Shown here one piece after another: positions 1-37,945 of a stretch of DNA of 37,945 nucleotides. The stretch's first letter is position 1. Every line of letters begins with the position of its first letter. Source of the stretch: Octopus bimaculoides (lineage: Eukaryota); NCBI RefSeq assembly GCF_001194135.2, contig NC_068986.1:117042335-117080279 (forward strand), written 5' to 3'. The notes beneath the pieces were generated by a model that saw only the letters and a list, made by a program, of their open reading frames with translations, had not been told where the DNA came from and made no database searches. The position numbers and the translations under genes are program-made.

Positions 1-4
1 CCAT

Positions 5-290
5 ATCATCATCATCATCATCATCGTTTAACGTCCGCCTTCCATGCTAGCATGGGTTGGACGATTTGACTGAGGACTGGTGAAACTGGATGGCAACACC
101 AGGCTCCAATCTAATTTGGCAGAGTTTCTACAGCTGGATGCCCTTCCTAACGCCAACCACTCAGAGAGTGTAGTGGGTGCTTTTACGTGTCACCCGCACG
201 AAAACAGCCACGCTCGAAATGGTGTCTTTTATGTGCCACCCGCACAAGAGCCAGTCCAGGGGCACTGGCAACGATCTCGCTCGAAAGGCA
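5..290 (-). mobile_element. SINE family B (local label; (ATG)n tail, tggttggcgttaggaagggcatccagctgtagaaac core)
   Basis: (CAT)n followed by cgtttaacgtccgccttccatgctagcatgggttggacg; repeated more than 15 times in the window; the (ATG)n tail suggests mobilisation by an RTE-type LINE (inference). Confidence 0.8.

Positions 291-412: not shown

Positions 413-17431
<17,019 letters not shown>

Positions 17432-17735: not shown

Positions 17736-17783
<48 letters not shown>
17736..17783. repeat. (CA)n microsatellite in the putative PI4KA 3' UTR; another at 28019-28041
   Basis: Read directly. Confidence 0.95.

Positions 17784-18607: not shown

Positions 18608-18668
<61 letters not shown>
18608..18668. 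repeat. (TA)n microsatellite; others at 3641-3668 and 37917-37945
   Basis: Read directly. Confidence 0.95.
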
Positions 18669-18673
<5 letters not shown>

Positions 18674-25373: not shown

Positions 25374-25424
25374 TTAAATGATTTGTTTGGAATCAGCTCT
25401 CTGAGACCATTCATGCCAAGAACC
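25374..25424 (-). CDS. Sulfurtransferase terminal exon (GSWHEWSQRADSKQII*)
   Basis: tttcag acceptor; completes the rhodanese C-terminal signature; TAA at 25376-25374. Confidence 0.94.
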   Translation of the reverse strand, partial: GSWHEWSQRADSKQII

Positions 25425-28400
25425 CTGAAATTAGGAACAAAAAATTGGTTTGAGGGTTAATTCAGAATTGTACAGACATCTTTTATGTAAATACAGGTCA
25501 ACAGGAAAGTTAAATTACTTTATAGGAAATAGAGAAAAATATCAGTTGAGTGATGAGATATTGGGATGAAGCAATTTGTTTTAATGTAATTTAAGAATCC
25601 CTATTGTTTGCTGTCTACTTCATGCTTACATGGGTCAGACAGAATTTGTTGAAGCAGATATTTTTCTATGTCTGGATGCTCTTCCTGTTGCCAACCCTCT
25701 CTTGTTTCCAAGTACGGTAATATTTCCATTTCATAGATTGGAAATGAATGCCATTTGTTTATAATAACCATACAATATTTAGACAAAGGTCCCCTGCAAA
25801 AACACTCAAACATATGTGCAAGGGGTTTCTTTCAGGTAATTTAGTGCCAACACCCTTTGGCCTCATTTCCTGGTAAGAATTTATCTGAATTGTCTTTGCC
25901 AGAAAGGTAGGCAATGAGGTGTTTGGTTGGTTTCTTAAAAGGTGTGTTGCAAATTGTTAGATCAACTGCATCACAAAACTCCAAGGCCTTATACCTGCCT
26001 AATTTCTGAAGCTGTAACTATAGACTCCATGTGCATCATGAAAGCCATCCATGTGTTTAACACCATGTCCATAGAAGCCATTAGCTACAAGATCATAGTC
26101 ACTGACTGTTGAGGTAGTCTGCAGAAGACTCTCATAAAAGTGACCCTTCTGGTGTTCCATCAGTGAGGTATACGTCAAGATAAATGTTGCTACTGTGCTA
26201 CCTCTAATTAGACTTAATTATCCTGTTACACACTCCTACAACTTCCATTGCCTTATCTATCCATCTCTCAGCAAACAGGATACCTCTGTCATCACTATTG
26301 CTCACCCAAGAGAGTTTGAACTGCTATCTTCTACCCTGAGGAATTTGGGGAGAATAAAAAATGGTTTCTATTTTACTCCCCCCACTCAATCTCAACTCTC
26401 TGCGCCACTTTCTTGTACCTTGAAAGTAAAACCTTATGCCTCATCTCTGCGTGTTTTTGCTCCTCTTTCCTGCTTTAGCCTCTCAATATCTGAACCCCCC
26501 TCCCCCACATTAAAGGATCTTGTCTTGTGAGTTACTTAGTGACCTCACAAGTGGCAGTGTCACAAAAAAAAAAAGGGCATCCAGCCATAGAAACCATGTC
26601 AAAGCAGATGCTGAAGACCAACAGAGCTGTCAGTTTAGTTGGATCCTGTTGAACTGCCCAACCCATTGTTAGTAATGGAATACGGATGTTGAATGATGAT
26701 GGAGCAGGCAAAAATGTTGGTAGTTAGCAACAGTTAAGAGTTGAAGTATTTCCTGGCCTGTTGAGAAGGAGGACACATTATAAGAGGATATAAATACTTG
26801 ACGAAATACTAAGTAACTTTATACAACCGATTCATTTGTGCTGCTGAGTCAAAAGAAATTAATAAAATTCATTTGTAAAAAGACAGAAGTACAATTGAAG
26901 AACTTACCAAATAGACGGTGATTTCTTCTTTACCAAGCATTTCTGCAGCAGCAGCAACGCCACAAGCAGTTACTCCCGTTTGACACGTACAAATTAAAGG
27001 TTTCCCAAGAGAAACTCCAGAAGCTGTAAACACTGAATTGGAAAAAAAAGAAAAAGAAATAGTTTAGAACAGAAAGAACAACAGTGTTTTCACAAAAACC
27101 TATTTGATAACATAAAAGAATTCTAAAAATAAAAATGAATATATATTCCACATACAAATATGTCAAATTCTCAAACTTTTACAGAGAGAGATGTTGGTCC
27201 TGCTACATGGGGAAAACAAGAACGGTGAGGTTACAACATAGCCAAAGTCATTAATCATTATCATCATCATCATCATCATTTAGCACCTTCCTTTCATGCT
27301 GAAATGGATCGGACAGTTTGACAGGATTCAGCAAGCTGGAGAACTGCATCAAACTCCAGTGTTGGTTTTGGTATAGTTTTTATGCCTGGATTCCCAACAC
27401 CGACTACTTTACAAAATGTGACACCAGCATTAATGAGGTTACCAAATAGCTTGCAAGACAAAGAAAAAGCCTTAACAGATTGGAGGTGTGGTATTGAGGG
27501 AAGGAACGTGTCTTACTATAGAGGAGGCATGTGGATACCCTGCAAAGAATTAGTGGGTGTAACTGGCAAGAAGACAAAAATGGTGGTGACCAAGTGTCAC
27601 CACCATCATTAGTAATTTGTGTGAAAGGTTATTTCTTCCTTGAGGTCATTCAACTTTACAAATAATCGTCTATTTAGATCTACATTACCCAATGTCTATT
27701 TCAGGGACAGTATATCTAGGACTGCATTATCTAAAGTGCCCTTTAGATACGTAATTAATTATCTTTCAGACTCAGTATGTTTAGGATGACATTAATTGTT
27801 GCGTTGTTTAAACAGGGTGTATCTCAGACTCCATTACCAATAGACTTCTAACAAGCTTGTCTGTAGTTCCCTGTGATTATGTCAATAACTGAGACAAGGG
27901 ATTTTCTCAGCAAATATCAAAATACCAATCCCTGAAATTCTTATTTGAAAACAATGTTTTGCAAGTTTTCTAGCCAATGTTTACAGTGTTTGTAATATAC
28001 ATTGCCAAAATATATGTACACACACACACACACACACACACAATGGAAAAGTTAGGTTTCACACAAGTAAATTTATATATAAAAAAAAATAAAAAAAGAG
28101 AAAATGCTTTGAGAACTTTATCCTGGGTAGACACAAAAAAAGTATTAACATTTTTATCAAAATAAGCTACCAGTTTCAATTGCTTAAAAAGAATTTATTC
28201 ATGCTGAAATAAAAAGAAGAGATACTAAAATAAATTGAATTAATCTTTCCTGATATCAGTTCTAGTATTTCACATTTTTTTCTTAAATATTTACATGGTA
28301 CTGGTGTTTTATTTTTTTCTGAGTGATGCTGGGTTATGATGGTATTAGCACCAGGATGTCCTTTTAAAAGTAATAACAGCAGGAGTGGGTGTTTGTAGCA

Positions 28401-31400
28401 GCAGCAGTAATGTTAGTGGCTGTAGTGGTCATTGTTTTATCAGCTTCACTAGAAGCTGCAGTAACTGTGGCAAGTTCAATAAAAGTTGCAGTAAAATTAG
28501 CAATAGTTTTCTCTCTTTCTCTACCAAAGATATTCTGCTATGGTTGGTATTTGGTTACGAAGGTTGTTTCTTTGTTGAAGCACTGTTGTTGTGCAATCAC
28601 TAAATTGATAGGGGAAAATTGTAAAATTTGGTCATTTCTTACTTGCACGTATGTATGTTCACTGAGTCCTGTTTGTATTCCCACATTTAATCTGGTTTGT
28701 CCTGGGCAATTATATGCTCAGGATTTGAAGAAAATTACATTGGACAAATCAGTAAATCCTTAAGACAACATATAGACAGTGAATGCAAATACATATGTGC
28801 GAATAAGAAACAACCAAACTTTATGATTTTCATCTTAATATCAATTTAGTGATTACACAACAACAATGCATCAACAAAAGAACAACCCTTATAACCAAAT
28901 ACCAATCTCATCAAAATACCTGTAGTAAAGAAAGGGAGACAACTATAAGGTGGGCCAGAATTTATGACTCACTTATTAGTTTTTTAATATGCTTATTTTA
29001 TTATTGTATTCTTTAATTCATTTCAGTCATTTGACTGCAGCCATGCAGGAGCACTGCTTTTAGTCGAACAAATCAACCCCAGGACTTATTGTTTGTAAGC
29101 CTAGTGCTTTTTCTATCGGTTTCTTTTGCCAAACTGCTAAGTTACGGGGGCGTAAACACACCAACATAAGTTATCAAGCAATGTTGGGGGAACAAAGACA
29201 CACACATATATATACAACGGGCTTCTTTCAGTTTCTATCTACCAAATCCTCTCACAAGGCTTTGGTTGGCCCAAGGCTATAGTAGAAGACACTTGCCCAC
29301 TTATCTAAATTTATTATTTTATTTCTTAATATGCATATTAATAAATATTAATATATTTATTTCTTTATTGCCCACAGTGGACTAAACAGAGGGGACAAAC
29401 AAGGACAGACAAAGGGATTAAGTCGATTACATTGACCCCAGTGCATAACTAGTACTTATTTAATTGACCCCGAAAGGATGAATTTTAACTCAGACTGTAA
29501 TAGCAGAAGAAATACCACTAGGCATTTCGCCTGGTATGCTAACGATTCTACCAGCTCACTGCCTTATGAATATTAATATATCAAATGTAACTAACTGTTT
29601 GGCACCTTGGGCAAGTGTCTTCTACTATAGACTCTGGGTGACCAAAGCCTTGAGTGGATTTGGTAGAGGGAAACTGAAAGAAGCCCATCATATATATGTA
29701 TTTGTCCCCACCACCACTGCTTGACAACCCAAGCTGGTGTGTTTATGTCCCTGTAACTTAGTGGTTCAGCAAAAAGGGTCAATAAAGTACTAGGCTTACA
29801 AAGAATAAATTTTGGGGTTGATTTGACAAAAGGTGGTACTCCAGTATGGCCACAGTCAAATGACTGAAACAAGTAAATTAATATAAGAATTCTCAAATCA
29901 TTTTTTACTTTTAGTTTTATTAATATATACACAAACAAACAAACACACACTGCATAGTTTCTGTTTACCAGATTTTACACTTAAAGTATTAAACAAGTCA
30001 GAATTAAGGTAAAAATTATTTTCTCCGGTTGCTATGCAGCAAGATGGAACTTGGAACCACAAGTTTGTGAAGTAAGTTCCTTAACAAGACAACCATGCCT
30101 GGAGATTGTTTAAAAGTTGGTACTTAACTCTAGTCCCATGGTGTCAAGTGGATCAGAGACAAATATATCCTTAAAATGATTATTAGAGTACCATAAAAGA
30201 ACATTTTTAGATGAAATGATAAAAAGTTCATCCACGCTCTGTGGATTGATACAGATTTCAAGAAAATTCTGTTTCCATATATTGGTTTTATTGTTGTTGT
30301 TTTACTTGAATGGGACAAAAAGAAGAAATAATTCAATAAAACTATCTGAAAACGTTAATACATTCTCATAAGAATATGTAACTTACAGTCTTTTAGTTCA
30401 GCCTTTGACTTCATGGTACCATCTGGTTTAAATAGTGTTGAATATGGTAAATTCTTGGAATGAGGAATATGACCTAACAAATAAAACAAATATAAATTAA
30501 TAGTAAAATGGGAAAAAATATTCCATTTGTAATTTACAGTAAATCATAATTATCACCATTATTATTAATTAATTTTTGGCTTCCATACTGGCGCTGGTTG
30601 GATGATTTGACAGGATCTGACAAACTGAAAGACAGCAGCATATGCCTATGTCTACCAAAGCTTGGTCTTTATGCCAACCACTTTACAGAGTGTAGTGGGT
30701 GGTTTTTGCATGGTACTAACACTAGTGAAGATTGGTTCATAACTTGCAAGGCTAAGGGACTAAACTGGCCCCTGTAACCAAGGGATAATAGAATAGATAA
30801 GACAGAGAGAGAATGAGGGAGGGAGAGAGAGAGAGAGAGTGTGTGCGGATAATGATTTTAGGTGGAAGTTAAAGGAGAGAAAGTAAGGTGAGAGAAACAG
30901 ACTTGTGGTCGTGATAATGTGGTGGAGGAGAGAACAACAGGGGATTAGAATATACACTGATTGGAGGGGAGGGAATATGGCAAGAAATAAGGGAATGGGG
31001 AGGACTTAGTGTCAGGGGTTATTGAGAAAAGGGAGAGAGAGAGATTACTTATTTTTCTGTCCACCAAGAACCACTTGTTAACCTTTTAACCATTTCAATC
31101 TTATTTTGATCTTGATTTTGATTTTTAGATGTCAAAAACAGCTGATGCCAAATGGGTTTTTACACTGAATTGATGGAACCAAAAATGGCAGCACAAAATC
31201 TATTGTAACCAAATGTCTATCACTCAATGCTGGTGTTTAGCACCAGGTTAACCTTAATGAAGCAGATTATTATAATCTACCCAGGACAGGTATGCATTTG
31301 CAGAACATTGGTGAAACCACAACAGGTCTTCTTGATCAACTGTGCCTTCATTCCGACTTTAGTGTTTTCTTGACAGAAATATTGGGGTGGTTTTCCATTG

Positions 31401-33376
31401 CCTTCCCTCAACCGGGTGGCTGTTGGATCATATGGAGCTCATCCGCCCTTCAACAGGTCTTATTTTTAGTCCTGTCAGGTGTCCAGACACCCTCCTGACA
31501 GGAGTTATTCAAGTGGGGGAGCCAGTTTAGTGGCTGACCACTTGACCATGGAACAGGTAGCACTTGTTTACACGGTACTAGTAACAAGTCTCATCAGCCT
31601 GTGATGAGATCCCTGACCAGACTCTACCTAAGACAAAAAAAATGTCCTTTGAAGAACTTTTTACTTTCCTGATAACAGAAGAGCAATTTTGGATAAACTA
31701 CCAAGAACTCTTTTATCCAAGAACTCTTTTATTATTAAGAAAGTAAAGAGATCTTCAAGGGAAATTTGACCATTGTTTTCTTCTTCATCTACTTATGTAG
31801 ATGCTTGTTTGTTGACATGATAATGGTGATGATGATGGGGGTGGGAGTGATGGTGTGGAAGAGGAAGAGGATGTTAAATCTTTAAGAATCTTTGGATTAT
31901 CAATGATGCCATGCAGATATTGTACTGTTTAGGTGTGAGAATGCCATGAAACATCCTAACAGTTATGTTAGCAATCCTAAAAAAAAAAAAAAAACCAATG
32001 TTCTAACGACATACCAAGTTTATCTTGAGGATTTCCATGGAAAGCTTGAGAAGGACGACAGTCGACAACTTTTTCAGTTTGGGTTTCCAGATTTTTTGCT
32101 ATTTCTTCAAAGGACCGAAAACGTTTTGGCTCAAGGTTAATTTCAAAGTTGCATTTCTAGAAAATTCAAGAATACAAAGAGGATGAGAAATTTATTTGTA
32201 AATCTCAGAAAAGAAGTGCCAATCATTAAATGAAACAAGAACATTCTTTTTTTCTTTTATTCTTTTACTTGTTTCAGTCATTTGACTGTGGCCATGCTGG
32301 AGAACCGCCATTGCTTGACAAACGATGCTGGTGTGTTTATGTCCCTGTAACTTAGTGGTTCGGCAAAAGAGACCGATAAAATAAGTACTAGGCTTACAAG
32401 GAATAAGCTCTGGGGTTGACTTGCTTGATTAAAGGTGGTGCTCCAGCATGGCCGCAGTCAAATGACTGAAACAAGAGTTCTCTTTCAATAAACATGGTGT
32501 TAGAGGAATCCTTATGTTAATAACACCTTCTATAAACACTGGGGTTTGTGGATTGAGTTCCCAAAGAATAAGATTTATTTAGAAAATTCCAGAAAACAAT
32601 GCAGAAAATATTAAATTTTTACCTCGTATGTTGTCGGTTTTGCTGTCACTTCATAGTTATCAGCAATCCACTTGGACATTCCTCCATCTAACATTGATAC
32701 ATCAGAGTGGCCAAGGTACTGAAAAAGTCAAAGAATGATTATTGGTGACTAAGCACAAAGTAAATAGTTTAGAGTTGTGGCTTTCATGCCTTTTACAACA
32801 TTGTTAACCCTTTCGTTACTGTATTTAGTTTGAGATGCTCTGTGTTTCTTTCAGTTGATTTTAAATATAACAAAGAACTTAGTAAAATAACTTAGTTATC
32901 ATTAAGCTAGTGTTAGGAACATAAATTGGGACTAAGATTTTAATTCAAAACTTATGAAAGCAAAACATTTGTACTACAGAGCCAGAGGCAGTTTCAGCCG
33001 GATTGGTATCGAAAGGGTTAAGAATTGTTTGTCTATTATATATTTTAACCCTTTTGTTACCATATTTCTGTTGAGATGCTCTGTGTTTCTTTCAATTAAT
33101 TTTAAATATAACAAAGAATTTAGTAAAATAACTTAGTTATCATTAAGCTAGTCTTAGGAGCATAAGTTGTGATGAAGATTTGGTGGAAGATTTTAATTCA
33201 AAACTTATGAAAACAAGACATTTGTACTACAGAGCCAGAGCTGGTTTCATCTGGGTTGGTAACGAAAGGGTTAATGGTATAATAGAAATGGGATGGCTTT
33301 AACTGGCAAGGAAGGAAACAATTACTGATTGGACATTTATTTCTGGTTTTTTTTTGAAGGTTGGTGTTTATGTAAT

Positions 33377-33431
<55 letters not shown>

Positions 33432-35856
33432 ATGCACACACATATGTAAAATCATTAACCTCACACACACACATGTAATTGTGCATATACCTCAATTTTT
33501 AATTGAATCGTTGTCCCTGTTGAGTCAAGCGAAATCGAATTGTGGCCAATGACCCAGCAAGTAAAGTGAGATCACAGCCGAGGCTGATACCAGTGTTGCA
33601 TAACCAGAGCAATTTAAAAGTACCCCTTAAATCGTTGGGCGATATGCTGTGCTTGAGAAGATCTACTGAGTCAAGTAAAATCAAAATGGAAATCTTTGTT
33701 GTGGCCAATGCCACTTCCACCTGACTGGTAGCACGCAATAAGCACCATTCAAGCGTGGGTCAATGCCAGTGCCGCCTGACTGGTTCCCCATGCTTGTGGC
33801 ATGTAAAAAGCACCGTCTGAACATGGTTGATGCCAGTGCCCCTGACTGGCCCCTGTGCTGGTGGCACGTAAAAAGCATTCACTATATTCTCGGAGTGGTT
33901 GGCATAAAGAAGGGCATCCAGCTGTAGAAACCTTGCCAGATCAGATTGGAGCCTGGTGCAGCCATTTGGTTCACCAGTCCTCAGTCAAATCGTCCAGCCC
34001 ATGCCAGCATGGAAAGCGGACGTTAAACGATGATGATGATGATGATGATGATACAGTGTAACTAGATAAAGATTCAGCTGATATTTCTAGCATGTCAAAC
34101 ATTATTTGCTGAAACTCTTGAATCCCACACTGTAGGCCAGTCCTGATTAAACAGAGTTATGAGTAAAAACCATTCCAGCCATGACCATGCAGGCTTTTGA
34201 AGAATATTTCAGACAATAACAAAATTATCTAATGTGTCCTCCCTTGCTTTGAATAGAAGAATGGGATTTGGGAGAGATTTAAGTGCTATTTCTAGCGGCC
34301 GCATGGGTTGGCTCTTAGGTGAAACTTGATCAAGTAGAGCTATGAGCAAAAACATTCCAGTTGTGACCATCCTGTTTGTTTAGGGGTTTGTAAGACCACA
34401 TCATTTAAGGTGCCTTTCCTTTATTATGAAAATAGGGTACAATCTGAGAAAAATTTGGTTGCTATTTCTAGTTTGTAGAAGTGTCCTTAGTTATGATCTC
34501 TGTATCGATGTAACATAAGAAGATAAGAAGAAATAATCAGAAAGTTTGTAATAGGCGCAGGGGTGGTTGTGTGATAAGTAGCTTGCTTACCAACCACATG
34601 GTTCTGGGTTCAGTCCCACTACATGGAACCTTGGGCCAGTGTCTTCTACTATAGCCTCAGGCCGATCAAAGCCTTGTGAGTGGATTTGGTAGATGGAAAC
34701 TGAAAGAAGCCTGTCATATATGTGTGTGTTTGTGTGTCTGTGTCCCCCCATCATCACTTGACAACTGATGCTGGTGTGTTTACGTCCCCATAACTTAGTG
34801 GTTCAGCAAAAATGACCGATGGGATAAGTACGAGGCTCACAAAGAATAAGTCTTGGGGTCGATTTGTTCGACTAAAGGCGGTGCTCCAGCATGGCCACAG
34901 TCAAATGACTGAAATAAATAAAAGAATAAAGGAAAGAAACAAAGGAATGCCTACCTTAAACATCCACCAGGCTCGGAATGCTGAGCTGTTGTTTTGCTGA
35001 TCATAAACAATAATATAATTCTTATTGGAAATTCCCAAATTTCCAATGTATTCACTTAAACAATTTGTATCTGGTAAGTCGTACGGCAGATGTTTAGTTG
35101 GGGTACTGCACTGGTTCAGATCAAAGTAGATGGATCCAGGAATATGTTGCCTGGGGCAAAGAAATTATAATATCACTGTTTGTTACAATGTGTGTTTGGG
35201 TGTTATGCTTTTAACAGCCTTAACTATGGGAAGAAACTGAAGATGTAATTGAAATTTTTTAACAATGGAACAAGTCTGAGTGTTATGTGTCTAATAATCT
35301 TAATGAAACAAAATTGAAGACGTGATCAAATTATTCGACATAAAACAAGTTTGCTTGTTGTGCTTTAAACAAACTGAACTATGGAATGAAAGTAAAGACA
35401 ATCAAAATATTTAATGCAATGAAACAATGTTATGAAGATTTATAAATTCATGCTTCATAAATGAAATAAAATTAACAAAACATGAAATTTCCATAGGAAT
35501 TTCTTCTGATTCATTATGTTCTGAGTTCAAATTCCACAAGGCTGACTTTGTCTTTCATTCTTTCAGGGTCAATAAATAAAGTAAAGTGAAGCCCTGGTTT
35601 GAAGTAATCGACTAAAACCTTCCCCTTAAATTTCAGGCTTTGTGCCTATAGTAGAAAGGATTATTATTATAATAAATTAATTATAGGTGTAGGAGTGGCT
35701 GTGTGGTAAGTAGCTTGCTTACCAACCACATGGTTCCGGGTTCAGTCCCACTGCGTGGCATCTTGGGCATGTGTCTTCTACTATAGCCTCGGGCCGACCA
35801 AAGCCTTGTGAGTGGATTTGGTAGATGGAAACTGAAAGAAGCCCGTCGTATATATG

Positions 35857-35900
<44 letters not shown>

Positions 35901-37387
35901 TGTCTGTCCCCCTAGCATTGCTTGACAACCAATGCTGCTGTGTTTATGTCCCCGTCACTTAGTGGTTCAGCAAAGGAAAACGATAGAATAAGTACTAGGC
36001 TTCCAAAGAATAAGTCCCGTTGTCGATATGCTCGACTAAAGGCGGTGCTCCAGCATGGCCGCAGTCAAATGACTGAAACAAGTAAAAGAGTAATTACTTA
36101 AACTCCTAAAAAATATTTTATTTAAGCAACCTGCCAAAGAGACATGTAATTTTTTAGAAGCCCATGAAGTAGACTATGTGGTTTCTTGATGTATTATAAA
36201 TAGCAGTCAAATCTGCCTGACATCACAATGCCTTGCTGTCCATTGGTTATGATGATGAGGGTTCCAATAGATAGGATCAACGGAACAGCCTGCTCATGAA
36301 ATTAACATGCAAGTGGCTGAGTACTCCACAGACACATGTGCCCATAATGTAGTTCTCAGTATGACACACCAAACATGACAAGCCTGGCCTTTTGAAATCC
36401 AGTCACAACTCATTTTCACCAGATGAGTGGAATGGAGTAATGAGAAATAAATTGTCTTGCTTAAGGATACAAAGGTGGGGTTTGGTAATTGAACTCACGA
36501 CTGAAAACCCTAGCCACTGAAAACCCTAATCACTGAATACAATAGCTACTAAGGTGGTGAACTGATACAATCGTTAGCATGTTGGCCAAAAGGATTCGAT
36601 GCATTTCCTCCGTCTTTACATTCTGAGTTCAAATTCCACCGAGGCTGACAAATGCCTTTCATCCTTTCGGAGTTGATAAAATAAGTACCAGTTACACACT
36701 GGGGTCGATGTGATAGATATCACAGTGCAATGTCTTAAAGAAAAAGGAAAGTGACAATGGAAAAAGAAATATTTGATATACAATAAACGATGGGATGTCT
36801 TTGAGCATCTGTCTTGTCAAAGATAACTGATATGGCAGTTAGCAACATCATCCTCATCATCGTTTAACGTCCGCTTTCCATGCTAGCATGGGTTGGACGA
36901 TTTGACTGAGGACTGGCGAACCAGATGGCTACACCAGGCTCCAATCTGATTTGGCTTGGTTTCTACAACTGGATGCCCTTCCTAACACCAACCACTCCAA
37001 GAGTGTAGTGGGTGCTTTTACGTGCCACCGGCACGAGGGCCAGTCAGGCGGGTACTGGCGACAACCACGCTTGACATGGTGTATTTTACGTGTCACCTGC
37101 ACAGGAACCAGTCCATCGGCACTGGCAACGATCTCGCTCGAATGTCTTTTCATGTGCCACTGGCACAAGTGCCAGGGAGGCGACGTTGGTAACGATCACG
37201 CTGAAATGAATAAATAAAACAAGGACACCTCAACTTACTTCTTGTAGAACTTGTCGTAGCCAACACCAGGCTTTTGCAGACGAGCCCAAGAAACATCTAA
37301 AACACGAAGTTTGTCTGCAGACGACGATGACAAACAATCCTTCAGCCAGTTAGTGGACACGAGGGTTCCAATTTTAGTAATCCGCAT
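25374..37387 (-). CDS. Tandem-domain rhodanese / TST-MPST family sulfurtransferase, 281 aa; complement(join(25374..25424,26908..27032,30387..30473,32015..32156,32623..32718,34955..35150,37239..37387))
   Basis: Seven minus-strand exons with AG/GT ends, 846 nt = 282 codons. Protein: MRITKIGTLVSTNWLKDCLSSSSADKLRVLDVSWARLQKPGVGYDKFYKKQHIPGSIYFDLNQCSTPTKHLPYDLPDTNCLSEYIGNLGISNKNYIIVYDQQNNSSAFRAWWMFKYLGHSDVSMLDGGMSKWIADNYEVTAKPTTYEKCNFEINLEPKRFRSFEEIAKNLETQTEKVVDCRPSQAFHGNPQDKLGHIPHSKNLPYSTLFKPDGTMKSKAELKDLFTASGVSLGKPLICTCQTGVTACGVAAAAEMLGKEEITVYLGSWHEWSQRADSKQII*. Family motifs: LVSTxWL, VLDxSW, HIPG..FD, RxWWMF, LDGG..W, GHIP, CxxGVTAC, GSWxEW. TST versus MPST orthology cannot be decided, so no symbol is given. 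Confidence 0.95.
25835..26180 (-). mobile_element. Decayed RTE-clade LINE fragment, AP-endonuclease domain
   Basis: Minus translation HFYESLLQTTSTVSDYDLVANGFYGHGVKHMDGFHDAHGVYSYSFRN*AG.. then, after a frameshift, LEFCDAVDLTICNTPFKKPTKHLIAYLSG; resembles RTE endonuclease motifs GDFNGHVG and LEFC..N.L.I.NT.F.K. Confidence 0.75.
26908..27032 (-). CDS. Sulfurtransferase exon 6, active site (LFTASGVSLGKPLICTCQTGVTACGVAAAAEMLGKEEITVYL); catalytic Cys240 codon at 26985-26983
   Basis: Long pyrimidine tract plus ttcag acceptor, gtaagt donor; 125 nt. Confidence 0.96.
28503..28946. repeat. 108-bp inverted repeat (28503-28610 / 28839-28946), 228-nt spacer
   Basis: Ungapped manual alignment, 89/108 identical. 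Confidence 0.9.
28995..29300 (-). mobile_element. SINE family A, 3' two-thirds
   Basis: tttcagtcatttgactgcagccatgc...ggcttctttcagtttc. Confidence 0.75.
29600..29885 (+). mobile_element. SINE family A, inverted relative to 28995-29300
   Basis: caccttgggcaagtgtcttc...cagtcaaatgactgaaacaagta. Confidence 0.75.
30387..30473 (-). CDS. Sulfurtransferase exon 5 (GHIPHSKNLPYSTLFKPDGTMKSKAELKD)
   Basis: ttgttag / gtaagt on minus; 87 nt. Confidence 0.94.
32015..32156 (-). CDS. Sulfurtransferase exon 4 (KCNFEINLEPKRFRSFEEIAKNLETQTEKVVDCRPSQAFHGNPQDKL)
   Basis: tttctag / gtatgt on minus; 142 nt. Confidence 0.93.
32262..32476. mobile_element. SINE family A 3' end present in both orientations (42-bp inverted arms)
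   Basis: Arms 32268-32309 and 32434-32475. Confidence 0.75.
32623..32718 (-). CDS. Sulfurtransferase exon 3 (YLGHSDVSMLDGGMSKWIADNYEVTAKPTTYE)
   Basis: ttttcag / gtaaaa on minus; 96 nt. Confidence 0.95.
32808..33017 (+). mobile_element. piggyBac-like MITE, copy with 12-bp internal deletion (210 bp)
   Basis: TTAA at 32804-7 and 33018-21; CCCTTTCG...CGAAAGGG termini. Confidence 0.8.
33049..33270 (+). mobile_element. piggyBac-like MITE (222 bp)
   Basis: TTAA at 33045-8 and 33271-4. Confidence 0.8.
33500..34052 (+). mobile_element. SINE family B, long copy
   Basis: Head, subrepeats, core, ggacgttaaac(gat)n. Confidence 0.8.
34554..34930 (+). mobile_element. SINE family A, near full length
   Basis: Colinear with 35686-36090; B box 34607-34617. 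Confidence 0.85.
34955..35150 (-). CDS. Sulfurtransferase exon 2 (QHIPGSIYFDLNQ...AFRAWWMFK)
   Basis: gccccag / gtaggc on minus; 196 nt. Confidence 0.96.
35686..36090 (+). mobile_element. tRNA-derived SINE, family A (local label), near full length
   Basis: A box tggctgtgtgg 35696-35706, B box ggttcagtccc 35739-35749, internal (TG)n, 3' end gcagtcaaatgactgaaacaagtaaaagag; about 10 related copies in the window. Confidence 0.85.
36845..37203 (-). mobile_element. SINE family B, ending about 35 nt below the donor of sulfurtransferase exon 1
   Basis: catcatcgtttaacgtccgctttccatgctagcatgggttggacg and three subrepeats. Confidence 0.85.
37239..37387 (-). CDS. Sulfurtransferase coding exon 1 (MRITKIG...GYDKFYK); the exon starts at 37402 after an acceptor
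   Basis: Minus strand: cttctttgcag | tttttatcggaaagc ATG; A at -3; donor gtaagt below 37239. Confidence 0.9.
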
Positions 37388-37624
37388 GCTTTCCGATAAA
37401 AACTGCAAAGAAGAAAGATAAGAAGTGCTTTATTGAAAAAATAACAAAAATAAAATATAAATATAAATAGAATCATCATCATATTCTAACATCCACTTTT
37501 CCATGCTTGCATGGGTTGGATAGAATTTGTTGAGGTAGATTTTCTATGACTGGATACTCTACCTGTTGCCAACCCTCATCTTTTTCCTTGTGAGGTAATA
37601 TTTCTACATGACCAGAGATGTTTC

Positions 37625-37790
37625 CTTGGAGGAAGTGCATGTGAGAGAGGGAGTGGGAGTGAGAGAGAGAGTGTGTGTGTGAGAGGGAGTGTGTGAGAGA
37701 GGGAGTGCATGTGAGAGAGGGAGTGTGAGTGAAAGAGGGAGTGTGTGCGAGAGAGAGAGAGTGTGAGAGAGAGAGTGTGAGAGAGAGAGA
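37625..37790. repeat. Purine-rich (GA)/(GT) low-complexity tract
   Basis: gagagagggagtgtgtgagagag-type units; gtgcatgtgagagagggagtg occurs twice. Confidence 0.85.
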
Positions 37791-37945
37791 TGCAATGGTT
37801 GAAGAGAATTGAAAGATGGGAGAAAGAGGGAAGGTGATCAACAGATAGCCAAGAGTCGAGGGAACAAACATAGGCTTGATAGGATACACATACAAGCATA
37901 TACATACATACATACATTATATATATATATATATATATATATATA

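What the first reader, a model, noticed from the sequence alone, without database searches (positions are those of the whole stretch)
26908..35150. Sulfurtransferase with a rewired active site: neither rhodanese (TST) nor MPST type
Seen: the catalytic loop is C240-Q-T-G-V-T (26985-26968). Established: TST has CRKGVT and MPST has CGSGVT, and swapping these two loop residues shifts thiosulfate versus 3-mercaptopyruvate preference. MPST also uses a Ser250-His74-Asp63 triad and Arg188/Arg197 (human numbering) for substrate binding. Aligned by eye to human MPST from memory, this protein has Asn for Asp63 (FDLNQC), Tyr for His74 (HLPYDLP), Thr for Ser250 and Ala for Arg188 (DCRPSQAFHG versus DSRATGRFRG), and a roughly 5-residue deletion removes the EPEPR loop with Arg197. 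The C-terminal signature YDGSW is YLGSW. The frame, splice sites and catalytic Cys are all intact, so this looks like a functional enzyme with different donor or acceptor specificity, or a persulfide carrier, rather than a pseudogene (inference).
Basis: partly seen in the sequence, partly recalled or inferred. Interest (0 to 1): 0.72.

Follow-up and report, generated by a model that had tools for sequence, protein, structure and literature searches.

The report
Divergent octopus rhodanese-family sulfurtransferase paralogue
This is an intact octopus gene for a second sulfur-transfer enzyme that keeps the catalytic cysteine but lacks the residues its textbook relatives use to bind their substrates; the same pattern occurs in many invertebrates and nobody appears to have studied it.

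Summary
A 7-exon gene on the minus strand (37387-25374) encodes a 281-aa tandem-rhodanese protein with Cys240 in a CQTGVT loop at 26985-26968. It is identical to the annotated Octopus bimaculoides XP_014774610.1, named '3-mercaptopyruvate sulfurtransferase'. HMMER and MAFFT alignments confirm Asp63->Asn, His74->Tyr, Arg188->Ala, loss of the Arg197 loop, Gly249->Gln, Ser250->Thr and YDGSW->YLGSW.

It is not a pseudogene. All introns are GT-AG, the Argonauta orthologue has the same exon structure, dN/dS against Argonauta is about 0.1, and the AlphaFold model is confident and matches MPST and TST (TM 0.87-0.89).

Three things change the picture:
- Octopus also has a canonical MPST (CGSGVS, both arginines, His74) on the same chromosome.
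- The altered pocket is not cephalopod-specific. Bivalves, Solemya, Lingula, Capitella, Urechis, a sea urchin and a rotifer carry similar TST-like proteins.
- The pocket is not a fixed new design. In O. sinensis and O. vulgaris the loop is CNKAVT or CYKGVT, and replacements within Octopus concentrate in pocket residues while the rest of the protein is conserved.

Most likely this is a persulfide-carrying sulfurtransferase that no longer depends on 3-mercaptopyruvate or thiosulfate binding. That function is inferred, not tested.

The parts
37239..37387 (-). Exon 1 (149 nt): ATG at 37387-37385, residues 1-50 (codon 50 split, phase 2), including Trp34.
   Evidence: Donor gtaagt.
34955..35150 (-). 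Exon 2 (196 nt): QHIPGSIYFDLNQC...WWMFK. Holds Asn62 (35116-35114, equivalent to Asp63), Tyr73 (35083-35081, equivalent to His74), the inactive-domain Asp100 and Ser105 (equivalent to Tyr108).
32623..32718 (-). Exon 3 (96 nt): YLGHSDVSMLDGG...TTYE, the end of the N-terminal rhodanese domain and the start of the linker.
32015..32156 (-). Exon 4 (142 nt): linker plus VVDCRPSQAFHGNPQDKL. Holds Arg181, Ala185 (32045-32043, equivalent to Arg188), His187 and the shortened Arg197 loop. It ends in phase 1 inside codon Gly195.
30387..30473 (-). Exon 5 (87 nt): (G)HIPHSKNLPYSTLFKPDGTMKSKAELKD.
26908..27032 (-). Exon 6 (125 nt): LFTASGVSLGKPLICTCQTGVTACGVAAAAEMLGKEEITVYL, which holds the active-site loop.
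26968..26985 (-). Six-residue active-site loop Cys240-Gln-Thr-Gly-Val-Thr245.
   Evidence: Aligned to CGSGVT of human MPST and CRKGVT of bovine TST.
25374..25424 (-). Exon 7 (51 nt): GSWHEWSQRADSKQII plus stop TAA (25376-25374).

Best explanation
The window holds the O. bimaculoides gene for a divergent paralogue of the tandem-rhodanese TST/MPST family.

Shown:
- It has two rhodanese domains. The N-terminal one is inactive, with Asp100 where the catalytic Cys would be.
- The C-terminal domain keeps what generic rhodanese chemistry needs: Cys240 at the start of a six-residue loop, Gly at +3, and a hydroxyl residue (Thr245) at the loop end.
- It has lost every side chain that canonical enzymes use to hold their anionic donors. 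These are Arg188, the Arg197 loop and the Ser-His-Asp triad of MPST, and Arg186, Arg248 and Lys249 of TST.
- The scaffold is under purifying selection, but pocket residues change at about the neutral rate or faster.
- Octopus keeps a separate canonical MPST.

Inferred:
- The protein still forms a Cys240 persulfide and passes the sulfur on by the usual ping-pong mechanism.
- It takes sulfane sulfur from a donor that needs no cationic arginine clamp, such as glutathione persulfide, polysulfide or a protein persulfide, rather than from 3-mercaptopyruvate or thiosulfate.
- It therefore acts as a persulfide carrier or relay, and the identity of the pocket side chains matters little.
For: - Family and fold: Pfam Rhodanese matched twice, E=2e-31. 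Human MPST 4JGT scores E=3e-59 and bovine TST E=6e-58. The AF2 model has pLDDT 92.7 and pTM 0.91, and Foldseek gives TM 0.87-0.89 to MPST and TST.
- Lost substrate residues.
- Roles of those residues: Arg188 and Arg197 hydrogen-bond 3-MP, and a Ser-His-Asp triad is proposed (PMC12926118). Bovine TST depends on Arg186 and Lys249 (PMC10594923). The loop-end Thr is needed for TST activity (PMC8533005), and it is kept here.
- Selection against Argonauta: dN/dS is 0.098 and 0.091 for Octopus against the two Argonauta copies, and 0.20 between the Argonauta copies.
- Selection against the O. sinensis orthologue: the non-pocket part has dN/dS 0.23. In the pocket, 7 of 14 codons changed against 24 of 267 elsewhere (p=2e-4), and the nonsynonymous:synonymous count is 8:1 against 27:29 (p=0.024).
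- Control: in canonical MPST the same positions are the most conserved part, with 2-3 of 14 changed against 51-57% elsewhere.
- Cys240, Val244 and Thr245 are invariant in all cephalopod copies.
- Canonical paralogue P0254 lies on the same chromosome at 37.9 Mb.
- Squid- or cuttlefish-like homologues occur on intron-free contigs of about 1 kb in 62 blocks of the run-assembly collection, so they are probably transcripts.
Against: - No activity, substrate or localisation was measured, so the donor and acceptor are pure inference.
- Neutral-rate change in the pocket would also fit a protein that is losing catalysis. The O. sinensis and O. vulgaris orthologue has Ala in place of the near-universal loop Gly (CNKAVT).
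- Lys or Arg at loop position +2 recurs in O. sinensis, O. vulgaris, one Argonauta copy and some bivalves. That resembles Lys249 of TST and hints that some members still handle thiosulfate or sulfite.
- Expression of the O. bimaculoides gene itself was not checked.
- dS against Argonauta is close to saturation (1.3-1.5), so those ratios are approximate.
Confidence: 0.5

Rival explanations
1. It is simply the invertebrate 'TST' of mitochondrial sulfide oxidation, moving sulfur between glutathione persulfide, sulfite and thiosulfate. It works much like vertebrate rhodanese despite the substitutions, and loop variation only tunes the kinetics.
For: - Relatives are annotated as thiosulfate sulfurtransferase, and the Urechis unicinctus entry AEV92812 (loop CEVGVT, no Arg188 or Arg197) was deposited under that name.
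- Urechis tst is induced by sulfide together with sqr and pdo (bioRxiv 10.1101/2024.09.27.614670).
- The clade has multiplied in the sulfide-symbiotic clam Solemya velum, with at least 5 copies.
- Lys or Arg recurs at loop position +2.
- Most rhodanese domains show some thiosulfate:cyanide activity in vitro (PMC8533005).
Against: - Arg186/188, conserved in both TST and MPST and in 148 of 190 homologues, is Ala here, and loop positions +1 and +2 are uncharged.
- A dedicated anion-binding pocket should be conserved, yet it is the least conserved part of the protein.
- I found no open paper with kinetics for any member of the divergent group.
Confidence: 0.25
2. The pocket is under diversifying (positive) selection. 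A conserved rhodanese scaffold presents a rapidly changing binding site that is being adapted to new small-molecule or protein partners, so the paralogues are acquiring new functions.
For: - Pocket dN is 0.29 against gene-wide dS of 0.19 between the O. bimaculoides and O. sinensis orthologues. The nonsynonymous:synonymous count is 8:1 in the pocket against 27:29 elsewhere.
- The same sites (185, 241, 243) differ again between the two O. sinensis copies.
- In those copies, exon 4 differs by 8.5% while its upstream intron flank differs by 1.6%.
- Bivalves show the same enrichment, with 11 of 13 pocket positions changed against 42% elsewhere (p=0.002).
Against: - With 14 codons, omega above 1 cannot be told apart from omega equal to 1.
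- The paralogue comparison is confounded by a gene-conversion mosaic: exons 2-3 are 100% identical, introns included.
- The enrichment is not significant against Argonauta or the squid-like sequences.
- No candidate substrate is known.
Confidence: 0.13
3. It is a non-catalytic or decaying duplicate. It could be a structural or regulatory rhodanese-fold protein, or a gene on its way to becoming a pseudogene, with the cysteine retained by chance or for redox sensing.
For: - The substrate-binding residues are free to vary.
- The loop Gly is replaced by Ala in the O. sinensis and O. vulgaris orthologue.
- Two relatives have lost the Cys: P0126 (Plakobranchus, SQRGVS) and P0166 (taxon not looked up, GASGIT).
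- A tandem-rhodanese protein serves as an accessory subunit of yeast complex I (PDB 6YJ5 appears among the hits).
Against: - The reading frame and all splice sites are intact, and the 7-exon structure is conserved in Argonauta and O. sinensis.
- dN/dS is 0.1-0.3 overall.
- Cys240, Val244, Thr245 and the flanking TAC are invariant in every cephalopod copy, including sequences only 56-58% identical overall.
- Homologues are probably transcribed.
Confidence: 0.1

Closest known systems
Human and rat 3-mercaptopyruvate sulfurtransferase (MPST; PDB 4JGT, 3OLH, 5WQJ)
   Same: Best sequence and structure match: E=3e-59, 35-36% identity, TM 0.87-0.89. It has the same two-domain architecture, catalytic Cys position, six-residue loop, loop Gly and loop-end Thr.
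   Different: The loop is CQTGVT rather than CGSGVT. Arg188 becomes Ala, the Arg197 loop is shortened and lacks Arg, His74 becomes Tyr, Asp63 becomes Asn, Tyr108 becomes Ser, and YDGSW becomes YLGSW. Octopus has a separate true MPST orthologue (P0254).
Bovine and human thiosulfate sulfurtransferase (rhodanese, TST; PDB 1RHD, 1BOH, 8AGF)
   Same: Almost as close as MPST: E=6e-58, 34-38% identity, TM 0.87-0.89, with the same fold and Cys position.
   Different: It lacks CRKGVT (Arg248 becomes Gln, Lys249 becomes Thr) and Arg186 (Ala). Vertebrate TST and MPST group together, apart from this clade, in the neighbour-joining tree.
Uncharacterised invertebrate 'TST-like' proteins: Argonauta hians (2), O. 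sinensis and O. vulgaris (2 each), Dreissena, Ruditapes, Pecten, Solemya velum (at least 5), Lingula XP_013420773, Capitella, Urechis unicinctus AEV92812, Lytechinus, Brachionus
   Same: They show the same losses (no Arg188, Arg197 loop absent or changed, Asp of YDGSW lost, non-Gly at loop +1) and cluster with the window protein.
   Different: The loops differ almost everywhere: CQLGVT, CQRGVT, CNKAVT, CYKGVT, CLRGLT, CFTGMT, CNTGMT, CEVGVT, CFVGIS and others. Monophyly of the whole assemblage is weakly supported (bootstrap 32-45%), whereas the cephalopod subclade has 100%.
Single-domain rhodaneses with a CQ loop (human TSTD1 CQMGKR, E. coli YgaP CQAGKR)
   Same: They have Gln at loop position +1, according to the loop table of PMC8533005. 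The squid-like homologue reads CQMGVT.
   Different: They are single-domain proteins with an Arg at the loop end. No close sequence relationship to them was found here. This is a resemblance, not membership.

Membership tests
Tandem-rhodanese sulfurtransferase superfamily (Pfam PF00581 twice; TST/MPST/SseA type) | Two rhodanese domains joined by a linker, with significant similarity to solved members | tested here: met
   Pfam Rhodanese in 2 stretches, E=2e-31. 31 PDB sequences match, the best at E=3e-59. The AF2 model has TM 0.87-0.89 to MPST and TST.
Tandem-rhodanese sulfurtransferase superfamily (Pfam PF00581 twice; TST/MPST/SseA type) | Catalytic Cys at the start of a six-residue loop in the C-terminal domain, with loop-end Thr, Ser or Arg; the N-terminal domain lacks the Cys | tested here: met
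   C240-Q-T-G-V-T245 aligns with CGSGVT and CRKGVT without a gap, and Asp100 sits at the equivalent N-domain position.
Tandem-rhodanese sulfurtransferase superfamily (Pfam PF00581 twice; TST/MPST/SseA type) | Formation of a Cys persulfide and sulfur transfer (enzymatic activity) | not testable with these tools
   Needs recombinant protein and assays.
3-mercaptopyruvate sulfurtransferase (EC 2.8.1.2), the name under which NCBI annotates this gene | Loop CG[ST]GV[TS] | tested here: not met
   The loop is CQTGVT. The canonical Octopus paralogue P0254 has CGSGVS.
3-mercaptopyruvate sulfurtransferase (EC 2.8.1.2), the name under which NCBI annotates this gene | Arg188 and Arg197, which bind 3-mercaptopyruvate (PMC12926118) | tested here: not met
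   Ala185 aligns at Arg188. The Arg197 loop is 5-6 residues shorter, with Gln or a gap at Arg197.
3-mercaptopyruvate sulfurtransferase (EC 2.8.1.2), the name under which NCBI annotates this gene | Ser250-His74-Asp63 triad | tested here: not met
   The equivalents are Thr242, Tyr73 and Asn62. Asn at Asp63 also occurs in the canonical Octopus MPST, so only His74 to Tyr is diagnostic.
3-mercaptopyruvate sulfurtransferase (EC 2.8.1.2), the name under which NCBI annotates this gene | Orthology to metazoan MPST | tested here: not met
   P0254 (same chromosome, 37.9 Mb) groups with cuttlefish, gastropod, bivalve and Lingula MPST. The window protein groups elsewhere and is 34% identical to P0254.
Thiosulfate sulfurtransferase / rhodanese (EC 2.8.1.1) | Loop CRKGVT with Arg248 and Lys249 | tested here: not met
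   Gln241 and Thr242 occupy those positions.
Thiosulfate sulfurtransferase / rhodanese (EC 2.8.1.1) | Arg186 stabilising the thiosulfate anion (PMC10594923) | tested here: not met
   Ala185 aligns with bovine Arg186.
Thiosulfate sulfurtransferase / rhodanese (EC 2.8.1.1) | Thiosulfate:cyanide activity and mitochondrial location | not testable with these tools
   No assay or localisation predictor was available. The N-terminus MRITKIGTLVSTNWL starts only 7 residues before the conserved LVS..WL motif.

The most novel reading that the evidence does not exclude
The invertebrate TST-like clade, including this octopus gene, uses a conserved rhodanese scaffold with a hypervariable active-site pocket that is under diversifying selection. 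On this reading it is a family of sulfurtransferases, or trans-persulfidases, repeatedly retuned to new donors, acceptors or protein partners. It would then not be an MPST or a TST at all, and the current annotation would mislabel a functionally distinct enzyme class.
Probability: 0.13. Interest if true: 0.7.

Novelty: new variant of a known kind. Interest (0 to 1): 0.42.

Why it matters
Genome papers on marine invertebrates count 'TST' and 'MPST' genes as parts of the sulfide-detoxification and H2S-producing pathways purely by homology (for example PMC13212745). This gene and its many relatives carry those names but lack the residues that define either activity. Octopus has a separate true MPST. 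Pathway inferences and automatic names for this clade are therefore unsafe.

If the pocket's fast evolution on a conserved scaffold turns out to be adaptive, it would be a useful natural experiment in how rhodanese active-site loops set specificity. If it reflects relaxed constraint, it points to a carrier role that needs only the cysteine and the loop backbone. Either answer is cheap to obtain with recombinant protein.

Tried and rejected
- Pseudogene or annotation artefact: rejected. The frame is intact, all introns are GT-AG, three species share the 7-exon structure, and dN/dS is well below 1.
- A second copy or fragment inside the window: none. tblastn finds only the seven exons.
- 'Gln at loop +1 is a fixed cephalopod signature': rejected after reading the members of the 90% cluster. 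O. sinensis and O. vulgaris have Asn or Tyr there.
- Positive-selection test on the two O. sinensis paralogues (dN/dS 0.83, pocket dN far above gene-wide dS): set aside. The pair is a gene-conversion mosaic with exons 2-3 and their introns 100% identical, so gene-wide dS is not a valid neutral yardstick.
- Resolving where the divergent clade branches: the neighbour-joining tree leaves the deep nodes unsupported (bootstrap 8-45%), and long-branch attraction is possible.
- Published kinetics for the Urechis 'TST' or any other divergent member, or any paper on cephalopod sulfurtransferases: none found in the open library. Subscription journals are not covered.
- EanB-like C-S bond formation: only fold-level similarity (TM about 0.81, 20% identity) and no supporting evidence.
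- Rfam scan of the window: no hits.


Full report
**What is there.** The window is low-GC eukaryotic DNA rich in interspersed repeats. On the minus strand I rebuilt a seven-exon gene:

| Exon | Window coordinates |
|---|---|
| 1 | 37387-37239 |
| 2 | 35150-34955 |
| 3 | 32718-32623 |
| 4 | 32156-32015 |
| 5 | 30473-30387 |
| 6 | 27032-26908 |
| 7 | 25424-25374 |

Every intron is GT..AG. The CDS is 846 nt and encodes 281 aa, with Cys240-Gln-Thr-Gly-Val-Thr at 26985-26968. The protein is 100% identical to XP_014774610.1, '3-mercaptopyruvate sulfurtransferase [Octopus bimaculoides]'. The public gene model has the same limits and lies at the very end of chromosome record CM046606.1.

**Checking the by-eye alignment.** Pfam finds two rhodanese domains. 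The best solved relatives are human MPST (4JGT, E=3e-59) and bovine rhodanese (E=6e-58). HMMER's alignment to these, and two independent MAFFT alignments, give the same equivalences:

| Human MPST | Window protein |
|---|---|
| Asp63 | Asn62 |
| His74 | Tyr73 |
| Tyr108 | Ser105 |
| Arg188 (bovine TST Arg186) | Ala185 |
| Arg190 | His187 |
| Arg197 loop | 5-6 residues shorter, no Arg |
| Gly249 (TST Arg248) | Gln241 |
| Ser250 (TST Lys249) | Thr242 |
| YDGSW | YLGSW |

Arg184, Gly251, Val252 and Thr253 are kept. Published work ties these residues to function. Arg188 and Arg197 hydrogen-bond 3-mercaptopyruvate, and a Ser-His-Asp triad is proposed (PMC12926118). Bovine TST depends on Arg186 and Lys249 (PMC10594923). 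The loop-end Thr is needed for TST activity (PMC8533005). Among 190 aligned homologues, 148 have Arg at position 188 and about 140 have a CG[ST]G loop, so the departures are real.

**Is the gene functional?**
- The Argonauta hians orthologue P0002 is 76% identical and lies next to PI4KA, as the window gene does. It has the same seven exons with the same lengths, apart from 3 nt in exon 1.
- Nei-Gojobori dN/dS is 0.098 (Octopus against Argonauta copy 1), 0.091 (against copy 2) and 0.20 between the two Argonauta copies. dS against Argonauta is near saturation.
- An AlphaFold2 model from a 17-sequence alignment has mean pLDDT 92.7 and pTM 0.91. It superposes on MPST and TST structures with TM 0.87-0.89.
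- Homologues of 56-58% identity, probably from squid or cuttlefish, sit complete on intron-free contigs of about 1 kb. They occur in 62 blocks of the sequencing-run assembly collection, so they are probably transcripts.
- A pseudogene is excluded.

**Does Octopus also have a canonical enzyme?** Yes. Searching with the canonical Lingula protein returned P0254, a 289-aa O. bimaculoides protein also named MPST, at 37.9 Mb on the same chromosome, about 79 Mb away. It has CGSGVS, His69, Arg184 and Arg193 and YDGSW, but Asn at the Asp63 position. P0254 is 34% identical to the window protein. It groups with cuttlefish, gastropod, bivalve and brachiopod MPST in a neighbour-joining tree.

**How widespread is the altered pocket?** An exhaustive HMMER search of 1.8 billion representative proteins, followed by cluster look-ups, shows that the nearest relatives are not canonical enzymes. 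They form an assemblage of invertebrate 'TST-like' proteins:

| Taxon | Loop |
|---|---|
| Dreissena | CLRGLT |
| Ruditapes | CFTGMT |
| Pecten | CNSGMS |
| Solemya velum (at least five copies on one chromosome) | CQTGMT, CRTGVT, CTTGMK, CRTGMQ, CRTGVY |
| Lingula | CNTGMT |
| Capitella | CNSGVT |
| Urechis unicinctus AEV92812 | CEVGVT |
| Lytechinus | CFVGIS |
| Brachionus | CQTGVR |

All lack Arg188, and Arg197 is absent or replaced. Most have also lost the Asp of YDGSW. Lingula, like Octopus, has both types. The cephalopod subclade has 100% bootstrap support. The wider grouping has only 32-45%, so its monophyly is unresolved. I found no open paper that reports kinetics for any member or that discusses these active sites. 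Genome papers simply count them as TST.

**The pocket is not a fixed design.** The 90% cluster of the window protein contains two copies each from O. sinensis and O. vulgaris, 87-89% identical to it. Their loops are CNKAVT and CYKGVT, and they have Asp or His at the Arg188 position. The CNKAVT copy is the syntenic orthologue, lying next to PI4KA. The other copy lies head-to-head about 30 kb upstream.

I then compared codons between O. bimaculoides and its O. sinensis orthologue. The 'pocket' was defined in advance as 14 codons: positions 62, 73, 185, 189-194 and 241-245.

| Measure | Pocket (14 codons) | Rest of protein |
|---|---|---|
| Codons changed | 7 of 14 | 24 of 267 (Fisher p=2e-4) |
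| Nonsynonymous:synonymous differences | 8:1 | 27:29 (p=0.024) |
| dN/dS | pocket dN 0.29; gene-wide dS 0.19 | 0.23 |

Overall dN/dS for this pair is 0.30. Canonical MPST shows the opposite pattern: the same positions change in 2-3 of 14 cases while 51-57% of other positions differ. Bivalve members show the same enrichment as Octopus, with 11 of 13 pocket positions changed against 42% elsewhere (p=0.002). Comparisons with Argonauta and the squid-like sequences show pocket change at least as fast as background, but not significantly faster. Cys240, Val244 and Thr245 never change in cephalopods.

**A caution.** The two O. sinensis copies give dN/dS 0.83, with differences clustered around the pocket. 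However, exons 2-3 and their flanking introns are 100% identical, while exons 4 and 6 differ by 8.5-12.8%. That is a gene-conversion mosaic, so I do not use this pair as a test of positive selection.

**Interpretation.**
- *Shown:* this is a conserved, selected tandem-rhodanese scaffold with an intact catalytic Cys and loop backbone. It lacks the canonical donor-binding side chains and has a pocket free to vary. It exists alongside a canonical MPST.
- *Inferred:* it still forms a Cys240 persulfide, but takes the sulfur from a donor that needs no arginine clamp (GSSH, polysulfide or a protein persulfide). It acts as a carrier or relay rather than as an MPST or TST.
- *Rivals:* an ordinary sulfide-pathway 'TST' despite the changes, supported by the recurring Lys or Arg at loop +2, sulfide-induced tst in Urechis and the expansion in Solemya; diversifying selection creating new specificities; and a non-catalytic or decaying duplicate.
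- Three sequences cannot separate relaxed from positive selection on 14 codons, and no tool here measures activity.

**Verdict.** The gene is already annotated, and loop variability across the rhodanese superfamily is well known (PMC8533005). What is not in the literature I could search is that a broad invertebrate paralogue group labelled TST or MPST lacks the defining residues of both enzymes, and that its pocket is the fastest-evolving part of the protein. I rate it a new variant of a known kind, of moderate interest.

Noticed in passing
window 7088-17431 (+ strand): The last seven or more exons of a PI4KA-type phosphatidylinositol 4-kinase, ending ...YYQNKIPY at about 17428-17431. It is convergent with the rhodanese gene. 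The same neighbour is found in Argonauta hians (L001) and O. sinensis (L009), which supports orthology.
   Followed up: partly
window 37388-37945; O. sinensis loci L009 and L010: The window and the chromosome record CM046606.1 end 558 bp upstream of the ATG. In O. sinensis a second, head-to-head copy (loop CYKGVT) lies about 30 kb upstream of the orthologue, which is where the O. bimaculoides assembly stops. A second O. bimaculoides copy may therefore be missing from the assembly.
   Followed up: partly
L009 versus L010 (O. sinensis paralogues): A gene-conversion mosaic. Exons 2 and 3 with 250-bp intron flanks are 100% identical, whereas exons 1, 4 and 6 differ by 5.4%, 8.5% and 12.8%, and some of their flanks align poorly.
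   Followed up: yes
window 4-285, 5894-6089, 11987-12182, 36840-37142 (direct); 7331-7568, 33871-34049 (inverted): An interspersed repeat family of about 300 bp, possibly SINE-like, occurs in introns and flanks. It was not classified.
   Followed up: no
window 32278-32486, 34534-34929, 35666-36093 (direct); 28993-29299 (inverted): A second interspersed repeat family lies in the introns of the rhodanese gene. Its spurious ORFs (for example ...LFQSFDCGHAGAPPL...) recur in the ORF list. It was not classified.
   Followed up: no
window 10606-11158 and 16762-17027: Two long, near-perfect inverted repeats inside PI4KA introns: 255-nt arms at 95% with a 43-nt spacer, and 126-nt arms at 94% with a 14-nt spacer. 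They could be hairpin-forming or MITE-like elements.
   Followed up: no
window 6550-6828, 17736-17783, 18609-18673, 33379-33429, 37629-37790: Microsatellites (ATT)93, (CA)24, (AT)32 and (TG)25, plus a GA/GT-rich minisatellite next to the end of the scaffold.
   Followed up: no
L002 18485-18550 (Argonauta hians P0003): The second Argonauta copy is annotated with an extra 66-nt exon that inserts 22 residues into the interdomain linker. It may be an alternative exon or an annotation artefact.
   Followed up: no
L003 (canonical O. bimaculoides MPST) versus window exons 4-5: The canonical gene has only three coding exons, and one intron splits the active-site loop codon Gly248. Its first intron (phase 1, codon Asp195) lies four aligned codons from the phase-1 intron of the window gene at Gly195, right beside the Arg197-loop deletion. 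That hints the deletion arose by a shift of the exon boundary.
   Followed up: no
Solemya velum proteins P0055, P0059, P0063, P0068, P0118: At least five divergent TST-like paralogues lie on one chromosome of this sulfide-symbiotic clam, each with a different loop. This looks like a lineage-specific expansion.
   Followed up: no
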